Positions 11,238 through 61,375 of a stretch of DNA of 64,000 nucleotides are shown piece by piece; within the stretch, counting starts at the first letter, position 1, and every line of letters starts with the position of its first letter. The stretch comes from Octopus sinensis. Its lineage: Eukaryota. The stretch spans positions 45,446,001-45,510,000 of the forward strand of contig NC_043005.1 in assembly GCF_006345805.1 (NCBI RefSeq), read 5' to 3'. The notes below the pieces were generated by a model that worked only from the letters and a program-made list of their open reading frames with translations, ran no database searches and was not told the DNA's origin. Made by a program: the position numbers and the translations under genes.

Positions 11238-11861
11238 AAAAGCATCTGTGCTGGTGCCACATGAAAAGCACCTGTGCTGGTGTTACGTATAAAGGACCTG
11301 TGCTGGTGCCACGCATAAAGCACCTGTGCTGGTGCCACATATTAAGCACCTGTGCTGGTGCCACATATTAAGCACCTGTACTGGTGCCACATATTAGCAC
11401 CTGTACTGGTACTGCATATTAAGCACCTGTGCTGGTTCCACATATAAAGCACCTGAGCTGGTATCACATATAAAGCACCTGTGCTGGTGCCACATATAAA
11501 ACACCAGTGCTGGTACCACATATAAAGCACCTGTGCTGGCACCACATATAAAGCACCTGTGCTGGTGCCATACATAATGCACCTGTGCTGGTGCCGTACA
11601 TAAAGCACCTGTGCTGGTGCCACATATAAAGCACCAGCGCTGGCACCACATACAAAGCACCAGCATTGGTGCCACATTAAAAAGCACCAGTGCTCGTACT
11701 ATGCAAAAAGCACCTATGCTAGTACCATGTATAGAGCACCTGTGCTGGTGCCACATAAAAAAGTACTAGTGATAGTACTATGCAAAAAGCACTGGTGCTG
11801 CTGCCACACATAAAACACCCATGCTGGTGCCATGTATAAAGCACCTGTACTGGTGGACAAT
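11238..11861 (+). repeat. Minisatellite of ~24 x 26-bp units (aaagcacctgtgctggtgccacatat)
   Basis: Counted by eye; each unit has a GCACC..GGTGC dyad; runs directly into a C-type tail. Confidence 0.9.
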
Positions 11862-14087: not shown

Positions 14088-14434
14088 TAAATATATATAT
14101 ATATATTATATACATACATATATATATTATATATATAATATACACACATACATACAAACATACATGCATATATATACATACATATATATATAATATACAT
14201 ACATATATATATATATATATACATACACACATACATATATACATACAAACATACATGCATATATATACATACACACATATACTATATATACATACAAACA
14301 TACATGCATATATATATACATACACACATACATATATACATACAAACATACATGCATATATATACATACATTATATATATATATACATACATATATATAT
14401 TATATATACATACATACATATATATATAATATAT

Positions 14435-14467
<33 letters not shown>

Positions 14468-14590
14468 ATACATATATATATTATATATATATACACATAC
14501 ATATATATATATATATATACATACATATATATATATATTACATACATACATATATATATATATATACACATACATTATATATATATATAT

Positions 14591-14622
<32 letters not shown>

Positions 14623-14692
14623 ATACATATATATATACATACATATATATATATATATACATACATATATATATAACATACATATATATATA

Positions 14693-14741
<49 letters not shown>

Positions 14742-15135
14742 ATACACATACATATATATATATATATACATACATATATATATATATATACATACATATA
14801 TATATTATATATATACATACTATATATATATATACACATATATATATATATATACATACATATATATAGATATACATACATATATATATATAATACATAC
14901 ATATATAATATATATATACATACATAATATATATAATACATATATATATATATTATATATATACATATATGCATACATATATACTTACATACACATATAT
15001 ACATATATATATATATACACATATATATACATGCATATAAACATTATACACAAATATATATATATATATATATATAACATATATACACAAATATATATAT
15101 ATACATAACATATATACACAAATATATATACATAC
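14088..15135. repeat. ~1-kb compound (TA)n/(CATA)n microsatellite
   Basis: Direct reading; a higher-order unit catacaaacatacatgcatatata occurs x4 at 14150-14370. Confidence 0.95.
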
Positions 15136-15301
15136 ATATTTCTTACATTCTTTTACTCTTTTACTTGTTTCAGTCATTTGATAACACTGGTGGTGTGGAG
15201 AGGGGAGGCCAGTATGCATGGGCGACTGCTGGTCTTCCATAAACAACCTTGCCTGGACTTGTACCTGGGAGGGTAACTTTCCAGGTGCAATCCCATGGTC
15301 A

Positions 15302-15864: not shown

Positions 15865-17037
15865 ATGATGGTGTAGGTGCTGGGAAGTGGTCAGTGCTAG
15901 TATGTGCAGGGTGGTGTGATGTGGTGTCGTATGGTGGTGTTGGAGTGTGGGGGAGGTGAGTGGGGGAAGAAGGGTATGGTCTAAGGGATGAGGTAGGGTG
16001 GGATTTTCAGAGATGTTGAGGTTGGAATGTGTAGGGGTGGGGTAACGAGGGAGGGGTGATGATGAAGGGAGAAGTAGATGCCAGAGCAAGAGGAGAGGTG
16101 GGTGGGAGGACGTAGGAGTGAGAGGGGGAGGGTTAGCTGAAGAGGGGAGGCGAGTTGAGCCCATATGGTGCAAAGGGATGAAGAGAGAAGATTAATCTCT
16201 GCTCATGGTGAAGACAGGTGTCCAGATGGCCCCTGTGCAAGGACAATCTGAACACAGAAAGGTGTTGTAAAGAGTGACCAGTAGAGCGGAATTGACGCGA
16301 GACCAGGGTGTCGTCACCGAGATGGATGTCTCGGAGGTGTTCTGCGAACTGGTCAGCCAAGTGGCAACCCATTTGACCAATGTATAGAAAACGACAAAGA
16401 GAGCAGGAGATGCAGTAGATGATGTTGCTAGACGTGCAGGTGAAGGAGTCAGTGATATGATAGGGTTGATGATGGGTGCCAGTGAGGAGGGTGGTGTTGG
16501 AGAGGTAAGGGAAAGTGCAGCAGCGTGGGTGGGAGCAGGGGAATGAGCCGGGTTGGGAGGTTGGGTTAGGGAAGCAACTGTGGACCAAGAGGTCTTGTAG
16601 GTTGTGGGCTTGTTTGAAGGAATGGAGAAGTCAGTTAAGGAAGATGTGTAAAGTGGAGGGGTCGGACTGGAGTCGCCAGAAGGCTCGGAGAATGGTGCAT
16701 TAGAGAGGTATGGTGGTGGGGTGGTAGGTGAGGGGAAACGGAAGATGGGTGATGGCAGGGCGGGTGCAGGAAGAGAGCAGATGCACGGTCCACAGAATGT
16801 GCTCTGGCAAGGGCGGTGTGGATAGCGGTGAGGGGATATCCACATAAGATGAAGTGGCAAGCCACGAGTTGAGACTAAGCCTGAAAGTTATGGTTGTCAC
16901 TGCAGAGCCTCTGTAGATGGAGGAATTGGGAATAGGGGATGGAGAGCTTGGTGTGTTTAGGGTGGGAGGAGAAGTTGAGGTATGAGTGTGAGTCTGTATG
17001 TTTGAAGTAGATGGAGGTGGTGAGAGTGGAGTGATGA
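15865..17037 (-). mobile_element. 5'-truncated, frameshifted Penelope-like element (RT C-terminus plus GIY-YIG endonuclease)
   Basis: RT-end peptides TSIYFKHTDSHSYLNFSSHPKHTKLSIPYSQFLHLQRLCSD and CGYPLTAIHTALARAHSVDRASAL. GIY-YIG peptide FTCTSSNIIYCISCSLCRFLYIGQ..FAEHLRDI..HEQRLIFSLHPFAPYGLN (16133-16588). Confidence 0.9.
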
Positions 17038-20998: not shown

Positions 20999-21047
<49 letters not shown>

Positions 21048-21122
21048 ATATGTATGTGTATGTGTGTATATATATATATATATATGTAGACATATGTATG
21101 TGTATGTATATATATATATGTA

Positions 21123-21166
<44 letters not shown>

Positions 21167-21314
21167 GACATATGTATGTATATATATGTATGTGCATATA
21201 TATATATATATGTAGACATATGTATGTGTATGTATATATATATATGTATGTGCATATATATATATATATATATATATGTAGACATATGTATGTGTATGTA
21301 TATATATATATGTA

Positions 21315-21351
<37 letters not shown>
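20999..21351. repeat. Compound (TA)n/(TG)n microsatellite with a higher-order unit
   Basis: gtagacatatgtatgt recurs four times. Confidence 0.9.
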
Positions 21352-59832: not shown

Positions 59833-61335
59833 TTAAATATGGAGCTCTGGATCCAAGTGCCAAACAAGGTGAGCCATGAATTCTAATCGGTTTCCAAGCT
59901 TTTTTAGACATTTTCTGCAAGTGAAAGGATCTGTTTCATCAGCTGAGTGTAAGCTACTATGGAGCATGTATATTCCAAAATCCTCAAACCACATTCCACA
60001 ATGGTCACATTTACTGAGCCTTTTACCATTTACAGATGCTGGGCTAGAAATATTTCTCTGTCGAATTTGTGTTTGTTGGGAAAGATCTTCTGGATATTTC
60101 ATGAATGGTGGACATTGGGACATAGCTACAGAGTTTCTTGCAAGTAAACTCACTGGATATTGAGAATCTTGTTCTTTTGCACAGCCAGGTTCTCGTTTAA
60201 TCACAGCCCTAAGTGCACTCAATGTTTCATGAGAAACCTCTGGTGATGGTAATCTTTGTTGAGAAATTTCTGGCGATGACAGTGTTTGTCGAGAAATTTC
60301 AGGTGAAGACAGAGAATTTCGCAACATTTCTGGACAAGATGACGGCTCTGTTGGTACGACAGCACCACCAAACTGGTTGTTTACAGATTCAGACTTTCGT
60401 AACGATATTCCCTGATTTGCCTCTGTACTACTTGGAAGAATAACCATTTTCTCTGACTCAGCAGAAAACCTTCTAAATTGATTGTCTACTAAAGATTTGG
60501 CCAAGGTGTAGCTGGTAGAAATAGACATCTGATAGTTACTTCTTTCAGATGATAAAAACTGTTGTTCTTCAGATTCCATACTAGGATACTGTACTTCCTG
60601 CTTAATGAACTCTATCTCGTTTTTGTTTGAAGCCTCATCGCCATCGTGATCTTCGTTTTCTGATGCTGACATTCGGATAATCTTACTATTGCTGGTAGAT
60701 ACCTGAGCTACACAGAATCTAGCACAGCCTACCCATTTCCCTTCAGATGGTATTTTCGGGTTGATATCATCAGGTGGTCCGCTCGTTAATGCAGACATAT
60801 CTACAGGAGCTCCACGGCTACGTCGTCGTCCATTCGGCCGTAAGTTACTTTTTATTTTATGCAGTTTTCTATGAAGATCCAGCTCTTCAGCTTCCTGGAA
60901 ACCCTCACCACAACGTCGACAAACATGAATTAGAAGAATGCTGTGTCGACGAAGGTGACTACCAAGAAGAGAAGAACGGGCAAAGCGCACTCCACAGATA
61001 CGGCACATATTCTTCTGTCTGTGTGGCTGGTGTACCTTCATGTGCTGTTTGACATGGTCAGAACGTGTGAAACGCCGCCCACACAAATTGCACATGTAGG
61101 GTCTCTCACCACTGTGTACACGAACGTGACGTTGAAGTTTCGAAGGAGTTGTGTAAGACCTTCCACACACAGTGCAACTATGCAGTGTTTTGCCGTGAGT
61201 ATGTGACAGTACATGCAGTTGCATATCCCGCAACGAAGCAAATTGCATGGCACAATATTTACATGTGAACTTGGTCACCAGCTGCACTGTATATTTCTTG
61301 TCTTCAGAGATGGCAGACGTTTCCCCCAGTTCCAT
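59833..61335 (-). CDS. C2H2 zinc-finger transcription factor, 500 aa, single coding exon; 5 N-terminal fingers plus a C-terminal Ikaros/Hunchback-like finger pair
   Basis: Uninterrupted ORF from ATG (61335) to TAA (59833-59835). Fingers: CKYC..HVLSH, CTVC..HVRVH (canonical SGERP linker follows), CNLC..HMKVH, CRIC..HLRRH and CRRC..HRKLH (60859-61269); CDHC..HSSLH and CRKC..HLVWH (59857-60009). The track's first 11 residues start at a TTG inside the polypyrimidine tract and are intronic/UTR. Confidence 0.93.
   Translation of the reverse strand: MELGETSAISEDKKYTVQLVTKFTCKYCAMQFASLRDMQLHVLSHTHGKTLHSCTVCGRSYTTPSKLQRHVRVHSGERPYMCNLCGRRFTRSDHVKQHMKVHQPHRQKNMCRICGVRFARSSLLGSHLRRHSILLIHVCRRCGEGFQEAEELDLHRKLHKIKSNLRPNGRRRSRGAPVDMSALTSGPPDDINPKIPSEGKWVGCARFCVAQVSTSNSKIIRMSASENEDHDGDEASNKNEIEFIKQEVQYPSMESEEQQFLSSERSNYQMSISTSYTLAKSLVDNQFRRFSAESEKMVILPSSTEANQGISLRKSESVNNQFGGAVVPTEPSSCPEMLRNSLSSPEISRQTLSSPEISQQRLPSPEVSHETLSALRAVIKREPGCAKEQDSQYPVSLLARNSVAMSQCPPFMKYPEDLSQQTQIRQRNISSPASVNGKRLSKCDHCGMWFEDFGIYMLHSSLHSADETDPFTCRKCLKKLGNRLEFMAHLVWHLDPELHI
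60221..60340 (-). repeat. 30-nt coding tandem repeat x4 (SCPEMLRNSL/SSPEISRQTL/SSPEISQQRL/PSPEVSHETL)
   Basis: Four in-frame 30-nt units at 60221, 60251, 60281 and 60311; the first three share gagaaa(t/c)(t/c)tc and the fourth is degenerate. Confidence 0.8.
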
Positions 61336-61336
61336 T

Positions 61337-61375
61337 CTGCTGAAGCTACAAATATAGAAACAAAACAAAACAAAC
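61337..61375 (-). promoter_or_regulatory. 3' splice acceptor of the ZNF coding exon (polypyrimidine tract plus three tandem AGs)
   Basis: Minus strand reads ttttgttttgtttctatatttgTAG|cttCAG|CAG|aATG. The AGs lie at 61347-46, 61341-40 and 61338-37, all upstream of the ATG, implying at least one upstream non-coding exon. Confidence 0.75.

What the first reader, a model, noticed from the sequence alone, without database searches (positions are those of the whole stretch)
59857..60009. Ikaros/Hunchback-type dimerisation finger pair on a protein whose DNA-binding array is neither Ikaros nor Hunchback
Seen: the C-terminus reads CDHCGMWFEDFGIYMLHSSLH-SADETDPFT-CRKCLKKLGNRLEFMAHLVWH, about 280 aa away from a 5-finger cluster. 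Established: the Ikaros C-terminal pair is approximately [40 protein letters not shown] and mediates dimerisation rather than DNA binding; Hunchback and TRPS1 carry related pairs. The F.D...Y..H...H, DPF.C and R.EF..H signatures match. The N-terminal fingers (PSKLQRH, RSDHVKQH, RSSLLGSH) do not resemble Ikaros, Pegasus or Hunchback fingers, and the last finger is Hx3H where Ikaros has Hx5H. Inference: a 5+2 architecture that may be a separate lophotrochozoan branch of dimerising ZNF repressors, possibly able to heterodimerise with Hunchback/Ikaros-like proteins.
Basis: partly seen in the sequence, partly recalled or inferred. Interest (0 to 1): 0.75.

Follow-up and report, generated by a model that had tools for sequence, protein, structure and literature searches.

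The report
Octopus zinc-finger gene with Ikaros-type tail
The flagged stretch is the tail of an annotated Octopus sinensis transcription-factor gene that carries an Ikaros-type "dimerisation" zinc-finger pair behind an unrelated five-finger DNA-binding array; this modular design is already known from worms and vertebrates, here in an unstudied family seen only in molluscs.

Summary
Window 59857-60009 (- strand) encodes two C2H2 fingers at the end of a 500-aa reading frame (59836-61335). They lie 283 aa after five N-terminal fingers. The frame is 100% identical to RefSeq "zinc finger protein ztf-16-like" of Octopus sinensis.

The pair is specifically of the Ikaros type:
- The joint signature (F.D in finger 1, [DN][RK].[ED]F..H in finger 2) occurs in 0 of about 2,025 ordinary adjacent finger pairs.
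- Three of four vertebrate IKZF C-terminal pairs outscore every ordinary pair under the family profile.
- For the octopus sequence itself the link is weak. It rests partly on intermediates (a chiton member and other mollusc families).

The N-terminal array is generic, not Ikaros-like. All named relatives are molluscs, and cephalopods have at least five paralogues. No non-mollusc orthologue was found. A Hunchback-type finger scores no better than ordinary fingers.

Dimerisation, repressor activity and pairing with Hunchback are untested. Pairing with its own paralogues is more plausible.

Verdict: a new, uncharacterised member of the known Hunchback/Ikaros-like (HIL) architectural class, of modest interest.

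The parts
59836..61335 (-). Coding sequence of 500 aa from ATG to the last codon. The stop TAA is at 59833-59835. RefSeq isoform X2 adds two residues (MD) plus two bases of the next codon from an upstream exon that was not found in the window.
   Evidence: the Argonauta orthologue is called as a single-exon 507-aa gene
61346..61370 (-). Polypyrimidine tract plus AG splice acceptor just upstream of the ATG. The exon starts at about 61345.
   Evidence: ttttgttttgtttctatatttgtag|cttcagcagaATG; P0001 begins MDSFSRMELGE
61201..61263 (-). Finger 1 (residues 25-45). Residues at the usual DNA-contact positions are S,R,D,L.
   Evidence: Pfam zf-C2H2
61114..61176 (-). Finger 2 (residues 54-74, helix TPSKLQRH). 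Nearly invariant across Mollusca, and followed by a canonical HSGERPY linker.
61030..61092 (-). Finger 3 (residues 82-102, helix RSDHVKQH). Invariant core; contact residues R,D,H,Q.
60943..61005 (-). Finger 4 (residues 111-131, helix RSSLLGSH).
60859..60921 (-). Finger 5 (residues 139-159). Contact positions are E,E,E,L, so it is unlikely to read bases.
60010..60858 (-). Linker of 283 aa rich in Ser, Glu and Pro, presumed disordered. It holds conserved short motifs: GKWVGCARFCV (60709-60741), MSISTSYTLA (60499-60528), SSPEIS repeats (60232-60309), IKREP (60187-60201) and PEDLS (60079-60093).
59947..60009 (-). First finger of the C-terminal pair (residues 443-463). Contact positions are D,G,I,L.
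59857..59919 (-). Second finger of the C-terminal pair (residues 473-493, GNRLEFMAHLVWH). Contact positions are N,L,E,A. Only 7 residues follow before the stop.

Best explanation
The stretch is the last 51 codons of a real Octopus sinensis gene with a single main coding exon. The gene encodes a sequence-specific C2H2 transcription factor built from three parts.

1. An N-terminal block of five fingers. Fingers 2-4 most likely bind DNA. This is inferred from their near-invariance, the canonical linker between fingers 2 and 3, and basic or polar contact residues.
2. A roughly 280-aa disordered Ser/Pro/acid-rich linker with short conserved motifs.
3. A C-terminal finger pair of the Ikaros-type 'dimerisation zinc finger' class. 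It most likely does not read DNA. Instead it probably joins two molecules, either two copies of this protein or this protein and one of its four or more cephalopod paralogues, whose second fingers are almost identical.

What is shown: the gene, its architecture, the conservation, and the specific sequence kinship of the pair to IKZF-type pairs. What is inferred: DNA binding by fingers 2-4, self-association through the pair, and the choice of partners.
For: - Gene and architecture.
- Conservation: the pair has 73% mean column identity and 24 invariant columns across cephalopods, bivalves and gastropods, with a chiton member more divergent at 96.6 bits.
- Contact residues: the positions that normally touch bases are D/G/I/L and N/L/E/A, and there is no TGEKP-type linker.
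- Specificity under the family profile: ordinary pairs have a median of 15.5, a 99th percentile of 29.2 and a maximum of 32.2 bits. IKZF pairs score 37.5, 34.0, 37.6 and 24.6. Mollusc families B, C and D score 48-78.
- Reverse test with an IKZF-only profile: the window pair scores 29.3 against an ordinary 99th percentile of 26.3. The chiton member scores 44.7 and families C and D score 35-51.
- Profile-profile comparison: probability 98.7%, 43% identity at consensus level.
- Joint signature: absent from about 2,025 ordinary pairs.
- Structure: AlphaFold2 predicts two beta-beta-alpha fingers at pLDDT 84.
- Literature: C-terminal pairs of this class mediate homo- and heterodimerisation in Ikaros and Hunchback (PMC5393059; 10.1101/2025.09.04.674178).
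Against: - No interaction was measured or modelled, because no multimer prediction was available.
- The octopus sequence's own score under the IKZF-only profile (29.3) lies below the best ordinary pairs (32.5), so the link is partly transitive.
- The last finger is H-x3-H, not H-x5-H as in IKZF.
- At least one family member, C. elegans HBL-1, does not homodimerise through its pair and instead binds another protein, LIN-46.
- No solved structure of an IKZF C-terminal pair exists in the PDB copy, so a fold comparison could not discriminate.
Confidence: 0.6

Rival explanations
1. The C-terminal pair is a protein-recognition module for a different partner, such as a cofactor or a regulator like LIN-46 for HBL-1, rather than a self-association domain.
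For: HBL-1's C-terminal finger binds LIN-46, and HBL-1 showed no interaction with itself or with other HIL members. The invariant surface residues of the pair would equally fit a conserved heterologous partner.
Against: For Ikaros, Hunchback and TRPS1 the published role is dimerisation. The parallel retention of near-identical pairs in five cephalopod paralogues fits a shared self-recognising interface.
Confidence: 0.2
2. The pair is an ordinary second DNA- or RNA-binding finger cluster, giving a bipartite DNA-binding protein like EVI1 or PRDM proteins. The Ikaros resemblance would then be superficial.
For: Whole-sequence PDB searches rank ordinary fingers first. The pair ends in the canonical H-x3-H. 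The window pair's score under the IKZF-only profile overlaps the top 0.5% of ordinary pairs.
Against: A genuine Ikaros pair also ranks ordinary fingers first in the PDB, so that test is uninformative. Contact positions are acidic or hydrophobic. The joint signature is absent from about 2,025 ordinary pairs. IKZF pairs exceed all ordinary pairs in two scoring schemes.
Confidence: 0.12
3. The gene is the mollusc orthologue of Hunchback, Ikaros or C. elegans ZTF-16, and is simply divergent.
For: RefSeq names it ztf-16-like and names a paralogue Eos-like. It shares the overall architecture.
Against: RefSeq names for family members are inconsistent (PRDM10-like, EVI1-A, ZNF148, myosin-G-like, sal-like), which indicates weak best hits. 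The N-terminal array matches only generic fingers. The Hb-type finger scores in the ordinary range. An exhaustive profile search returned no nematode, arthropod or vertebrate protein with a family A-like pair.
Confidence: 0.05

Closest known systems
Hunchback/Ikaros-like (HIL) class as defined in C. elegans (HBL-1, EHN-3, ZTF-16, plus SDZ-12, C46E10.8 and F26F4.8)
   Same: It has an N-terminal or central cluster of C2H2 fingers for DNA binding, plus a separate pair of C2H2 fingers at the extreme C-terminus for protein-protein interaction (10.1101/2022.06.20.496913). The DNA-binding arrays need not resemble Ikaros or Hunchback. RefSeq already labels this gene ztf-16-like.
   Different: Five N-terminal fingers with their own conserved helices. 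The family is seen only in molluscs. No orthology to any worm member was shown. No function is known.
Vertebrate Ikaros family (IKZF1-5) C-terminal dimerisation fingers
   Same: C-x2-C-x3-F-x-D...H-x3-H, then a short non-canonical linker ending (D)PF-x-C, then C-x2-C-x5-(D/N)(R/K)-x-E-F-x2-H. The pair sits at the very end of the protein after a long linker. BLASTP gives 33% identity over 52 aa and hhalign gives 98.7% probability.
   Different: The last finger ends H-x3-H (HLVWH) instead of H-x5-H (HIVRGEH). The linker is 9 residues rather than 7. The N-terminal array is unrelated. The Ikaros family proper is described as deuterostome in origin (Kastner et al. 2024, title seen).
Hunchback (Drosophila, C. 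elegans HBL-1) C-terminal fingers
   Same: The same two-domain layout, with a C-terminal pair used for dimerisation in Drosophila Hb (PMC5393059).
   Different: A pair carrying an Hb-type second finger (GEKCDGPVGLFVHMARNAH) scores only 26.5 bits, or 50.7 in hhalign, which is within the ordinary range. The Hunchback middle fingers do not resemble the octopus array. That comparison is from my memory of the Hb sequence and was not tested here.
Other mollusc families with the same kind of C-terminal pair (here called B, C and D; examples are Haliotis/Physella P0143/P0182, Pomacea/Sinanodonta P0218/P0226, and Sinanodonta P0244)
   Same: A C-terminal pair with the same signature, scoring 47-78 bits under the family A profile and 32-51 bits under an IKZF-only profile. 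One Physella isoform is named 'ikaros family zinc finger protein-like'.
   Different: Entirely different N-terminal finger arrays, and different pair consensus sequences (for example ...CQDRIEFMFHTVWHVKYPHTIPNY).

Membership tests
HIL (Hunchback/Ikaros-like) architectural class | A cluster of C2H2 fingers in the N-terminal or central part of the protein | tested here: met
   Five fingers at residues 25-159; Pfam zf-C2H2 E=4e-19
HIL (Hunchback/Ikaros-like) architectural class | A separate pair of C2H2 fingers at the extreme C-terminus, set apart by a long linker | tested here: met
   Residues 443-493 of 500, lying 283 aa after finger 5
HIL (Hunchback/Ikaros-like) architectural class | The C-terminal pair mediates protein-protein interaction (dimerisation) | not testable with these tools
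   No multimer modelling or assay was available. The only indirect support is non-DNA-like contact residues and strong surface conservation.
Ikaros-type dimerisation finger pair (DZF subfamily of McCarty et al. 2003) | Sequence closer to IKZF/TRPS1-type C-terminal pairs than to ordinary adjacent C2H2 pairs | tested here: met
   Family profile: IKZF pairs 34-37.6 bits (one at 24.6) against an ordinary maximum of 32.2 over about 2,025 pairs. hhalign: 60.7-69.5 against an ordinary maximum of 54.3. The joint signature is in 0 ordinary pairs. Caveat: under an IKZF-only profile the octopus pair itself scores 29.3, above the 99th percentile but below the ordinary maximum.
Ikaros-type dimerisation finger pair (DZF subfamily of McCarty et al. 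2003) | Last finger with H-x5-H spacing (HIxRGEH) | tested here: not met
   HLVWH is H-x3-H. IKZF fragments P0262-P0265 have HIVRGEH.
Ikaros family proper (IKZF1-5) | Four (three in Pegasus) N-terminal fingers homologous to IKZF fingers 1-4 | tested here: not met
   The N-terminal array's best PDB matches are ZFP568, Aart, CTCF, ZBTB24, PRDM9 and ZBTB7A. The IKZF1/2/3 finger chains present in the PDB are not among the 60 matches listed.
Hunchback | C-terminal pair of the Hb type, plus the four conserved Hb middle fingers | tested here: inconclusive
   Only an engineered Pegasus/Hb chimera (P0221) was available, and it scores in the ordinary range (26.5 bits). The middle fingers were compared only from my memory of the Hb sequence. 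No authentic mollusc Hb was retrieved.
C. elegans ZTF-16 orthologue | Reciprocal best similarity or phylogenetic sister relationship to ZTF-16 | not tested
   The ZTF-16 sequence could not be fetched. No nematode protein appeared among the hits to the pair profile or the full-length profile. The RefSeq name alone is not evidence.

The most novel reading that the evidence does not exclude
Molluscs have moved an Ikaros-type dimerisation finger pair onto at least four unrelated DNA-binding finger arrays (families A-D). One of these, family A, expanded to five or more paralogues before octopods and other cephalopods split. This would give cephalopods a combinatorial network of homo- and heterodimerising transcription factors that arose independently of, and in parallel to, the vertebrate IKZF1-5 network.
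Probability: 0.3. Interest if true: 0.5.

Novelty: new member of a known kind. Interest (0 to 1): 0.3.

Why it matters
If the pair does dimerise, this family would be a protostome example of the modular 'DNA-binding array plus dimerisation finger pair' design outside Hunchback. It would also be a compact, single-exon system with five natural paralogue variants. These differ mainly in the first-finger helix, which could be used to study how such finger pairs choose partners. No structure of such a pair was found in the PDB copy searched. For octopus biology it adds a small, conserved, cephalopod-expanded transcription-factor family that is distinct from the large tandem C2H2 expansions. As it stands, this is an uncharacterised member of a known class, already labelled as such by automatic annotation.

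Tried and rejected
1. PDB sequence searches with the pair and with its family profile ranked ordinary fingers first. The PDB therefore holds no such structure, and the test cannot discriminate. I first guessed that 2ma7 (Eos) was the C-terminal pair; the control shows it is not.

2. AlphaFold2 of the pair followed by Foldseek against the PDB returned only ordinary tandem fingers, with TM-scores of 0.43 or less and E-values of 0.066 or more. This was uninformative.

3. A search with a short IKZF/TRPS1 pair alignment returned only five short fragments.

4. P0221, first taken for TRPS1, is an engineered construct (nuclear localisation signal plus chimeric fingers).

5. Hits P0089-P0095 and P0101 share the array but seemed to lack the pair, and I considered them as possible non-mollusc or pair-less relatives. 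For P0090, the one locus examined (L003), the pair lies on a downstream exon and is of the caenogastropod type. This is a gene-calling truncation, not a new lineage. The same is assumed for the others because their sequences are so similar.

6. PEDLS as a conserved CtBP-binding motif was rejected as a family feature. It is present only in the Octopus and Argonauta orthologues.

7. The exact-sequence look-up of P0001 found no contig, and the upstream exon was not found in the window.

8. Literature searches for Ikaros-like proteins in molluscs or protostomes found nothing relevant.

Full report
**What is there**

Window 59857-60009 on the - strand translates to CDHCGMWFEDFGIYMLHSSLHSADETDPFTCRKCLKKLGNRLEFMAHLVWH.
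- It forms residues 443-493 of a 500-aa reading frame. The ATG is at 61335 and the TAA stop is at 59835-59833.
- This is by far the longest ORF in a 35% GC, repeat-rich window.
- A polypyrimidine tract and an AG lie just upstream of the ATG.
- The frame is 100% identical to RefSeq [quoted passage not shown] (P0001, 506 aa). That protein starts MDSFSRMELGE, so only two residues plus two bases of the next codon come from an upstream exon, which I did not find in the window.
- The Argonauta hians orthologue (91% identical) is called as a single-exon gene with no neighbouring genes within 10 kb.
- Five C-x2-C-x12-H-x3-H fingers occupy residues 25-159. The C-terminal pair follows after 283 aa of Ser/Glu/Pro-rich sequence.

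**The family**

Full-length and profile searches recover about 70 clusters with the same layout and a strongly conserved tail. The tail consensus is C.HC.IWFED.AMSMLHNSLHSAD..DPFTCRKCLKKLGNRLEF.AHLVWHLEP.
- Every member that carries an organism name is a mollusc. The named groups are cephalopods (Octopus, Argonauta, Acanthosepion), bivalves (Mytilus, Argopecten, Pecten, Sinanodonta, Saccostrea, Dreissena, Mya and others), gastropods (Haliotis, Gigantopelta, Patella, Babylonia, Nucella) and a chiton (Liolophura).
- Fingers 2 and 3 with their linker (TPSKLQRHVRVHSGERPY.C..CGRRFTRSDHVKQH) are almost invariant.
- Octopods have at least five paralogues (P0001, P0010, P0012, P0035, P0042/P0017) spread over several chromosome-scale contigs.
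- In a neighbour-joining tree without bootstrap support, each of the four paralogue clades that could be placed holds octopod sequences plus an unnamed sequence that I presume is another cephalopod. P0010 lacks finger 1 and was left out. This suggests the duplications predate the split within coleoids.
- RefSeq names within the family are inconsistent: ztf-16-like, PRDM10-like, EVI1-A, Eos-like, ZNF148, myosin-G-like, sal-like, su(Hw)-like. They reflect weak best hits rather than orthology.
- Sequences that seemed to lack the tail (P0089-P0095, P0101) looked like possible pair-less relatives. In the one locus examined (P0090, L003) the tail lies on a downstream exon missed by the gene caller, and it is of the caenogastropod type. 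The others are near-identical in sequence and are assumed to be the same.

**Is the tail an Ikaros-type pair or an ordinary finger pair?**

Whole-sequence PDB searches put ordinary fingers first. A genuine Ikaros tail does the same, and no IKZF tail structure is in the PDB copy. That test says nothing, and neither does a fold search with an AlphaFold2 model (pLDDT 84, two beta-beta-alpha fingers).

I therefore scored finger pairs one at a time. An exhaustive search of 1.84 billion representative proteins with the family tail profile was rescored per domain. The null set was about 2,025 ordinary adjacent pairs cut from the retrieved proteins. Most of those proteins had been retrieved as top matches to the tail profile or the full-length protein, so the null set is if anything biased upward.

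| Set | Family A profile (bits) | IKZF-only profile (bits) |
|---|---|---|
| Family A | 117-139 | median 29.5 |
| Chiton member | 96.6 | 44.7 |
| Window pair | 123.7 | 29.3 |
| Mollusc family B | 54-78 | 32-38 |
| Mollusc family C | 48-55 | 41-44 |
| Mollusc family D | 47-60 | 35-51 |
| Four vertebrate IKZF-type tails | 37.5, 34.0, 37.6, 24.6 | (profile built from these) |
| Engineered TRPS1/IKZF chimera | 40.5-41.3 | not relevant |
| Ordinary pairs | median 15.5; 99th percentile 29.2; maximum 32.2 | 99th percentile 26.3; maximum 32.5 |

One higher "ordinary" score under the IKZF-only profile turned out to be a tail-type pair of a Ptychodera flava protein, so I excluded it from the maximum.

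Further tests agree:
- hhalign of the family profile against single sequences gives ordinary pairs a median of 37.5 and a maximum of 54.3 (n=300). IKZF tails score 69.5, 68.6, 60.7 and 48.1.
- Profile against profile gives 98.7% probability with 43% identity at consensus level.
It occurs in all tail-type pairs and in none of the ordinary pairs.

I conclude that the kinship to IKZF-type tails is real. It is weak for the octopus sequence on its own and is reinforced by intermediates.

A pair carrying a Hunchback-type second finger scores 26.5 bits, or 50.7 in hhalign, which is inside the ordinary range. Kinship to Hunchback specifically is therefore not shown.

**The N-terminal array**

Its best PDB matches are ZFP568, the designed Aart protein, CTCF, ZBTB24, PRDM9 and ZBTB7A.
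- The IKZF1/2/3 finger chains that are in the PDB do not appear among the 60 matches listed.
- Outside molluscs, only generic multi-finger proteins match, at 27-37% coverage and 30-38% identity.

**How it probably works**

Fingers 2-4 have basic or polar residues at the base-contact positions (T,S,K,R / R,D,H,Q / R,S,L,S). Fingers 2 and 3 are joined by a canonical linker. Finger 5 has E,E,E,L at those positions. I infer that fingers 2-4 bind DNA.

The tail fingers have D,G,I,L and N,L,E,A at the same positions. They have no TGEKP-type linker, and their surface residues are invariant. This fits a protein interface.

In Ikaros, and in Hunchback, such pairs mediate dimerisation (PMC5393059; 10.1101/2025.09.04.674178). 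By analogy the octopus protein most likely self-associates.

Its paralogues have almost identical second fingers and differ mainly in the first-finger helix: FGIY, YAMC, SAMF, FAIY, LAMS. Pairing among paralogues, with some selectivity, is therefore the most plausible form of heterodimerisation.

Pairing with Hunchback is unlikely:
- From my memory of McCarty et al. 2003, the Ikaros, TRPS1 and Hunchback domains homodimerise but do not cross-pair with Ikaros.
- C. elegans HBL-1 showed no interaction with itself or with five other family members, and instead binds LIN-46 (10.1101/2024.11.11.623063).

That last result also keeps alive the rival idea that the tail recognises a different protein.

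Nothing here tests repressor activity. An I-K-x-E-P motif, which resembles a SUMO-acceptor site, is widespread in the family. A PEDLS string, identical to the CtBP-binding motif of Ikaros, is present only in the Octopus and Argonauta orthologues.

**Comparison with what is known, and novelty**

[quoted passage not shown] In C. elegans it includes members whose arrays are neither Ikaros nor Hunchback: EHN-3, ZTF-16, SDZ-12 and others (10.1101/2022.06.20.496913). RefSeq already labels this gene accordingly.

What appears undescribed is the following. Literature searches found nothing on it.
- Molluscs carry several such families on unrelated arrays (A-D).
- Family A is conserved from chitons to cephalopods and is expanded in cephalopods.

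I file the finding as a new, uncharacterised member of a known kind, of modest interest.

Noticed in passing
window 60079-60093 (-), residues 415-419: PEDLS, identical to the CtBP-binding motif of Ikaros, sits 24 residues before the tail pair. It is present in the Octopus and Argonauta orthologues but reads SEDLQ in the other cephalopod orthologues, so it may be a chance or lineage-specific feature.
   Followed up: partly
window 60187-60309 (-), residues 343-383: A stretch conserved across the cephalopod orthologues: SSPEISRQTLSSPEISQQRLPSPEVS (Ser-Pro repeats) followed by AVIKREP. An I-K-x-E-P motif, resembling a SUMO-acceptor site, recurs in most family members at varying positions.
   Followed up: partly
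window 60709-60741 (-), residues 199-209: The motif GKWVGCARFCV lies just after finger 5. It is conserved in four of the five octopod paralogues (absent from the Eos-like P0035 group) and appears as GLAKFSL in many, though not all, bivalves and gastropods. A second block (MSISTSYTLA, 60499-60528) is shared with gastropods. The function of both is unknown.
   Followed up: no
P0297, P0301, P0302 (Logan contigs, taxon unknown): Family A members of 950-1,060 aa carry an N-terminal THAP-type domain (Pfam PF05485 for P0301 and P0302; MVKxCCVxGC... in all three) fused ahead of the same five fingers and tail pair. They also have a Glu/Lys-rich stretch that looks coiled-coil (not tested).
   Followed up: no
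P0143/P0182/P0194/P0277 (family B), P0218/P0226 (C), P0244/P0200/P0229 (D), P0246; P0157 (Ptychodera flava): At least three more mollusc protein families end in an Ikaros-type finger pair placed behind unrelated finger arrays. A 1,049-aa hemichordate protein ends in a similar pair.
   Followed up: partly
L003 1..4695 (ENA contig k141_404036): In this caenogastropod-type family member the tail pair lies on a separate exon about 0.7 kb downstream of a GT donor. The called protein (P0090) therefore runs into the intron and lacks the pair. In cephalopods everything except the first two residues (in RefSeq isoform X2) is on one exon.
   Followed up: yes
P0042 (Octopus vulgaris paralogue): The second tail finger is cut short (…CLKKLDYSILNEFF), whereas the Argonauta counterpart P0017 is intact. 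This is either a gene-model error or an isoform without a complete pair, comparable to ztf-16a in C. elegans.
   Followed up: no
P0221 (MetaClust UPI00085F1CE2): The representative protein library contains an engineered construct. It has an SV40-type nuclear localisation signal followed by two chimeric dimerisation finger pairs (Pegasus/Hunchback and TRPS1/IKZF types). It can be mistaken for a natural protein.
   Followed up: yes
L001 and L002 (Argonauta hians BAAFZT010000028.1 and BAAFZT010000007.1): An identical 507-aa orthologue is called on two different large contigs. This is either a recent duplication or an uncollapsed haplotype.
   Followed up: no
window 11239-11855; 14091-15139; 21002-21350; 16133-16860 (-): The window contains a 26-bp tandem repeat (about 24 copies), long AT/TA microsatellites, and a GC-richer patch at 16-18 kb. 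That patch holds overlapping ORFs, one of which contains a string (…CSLCRFLYIGQ…EH…) reminiscent of a GIY-YIG nuclease of a Penelope-like element. Pfam gave no hit, and Rfam found nothing in the window.
   Followed up: partly
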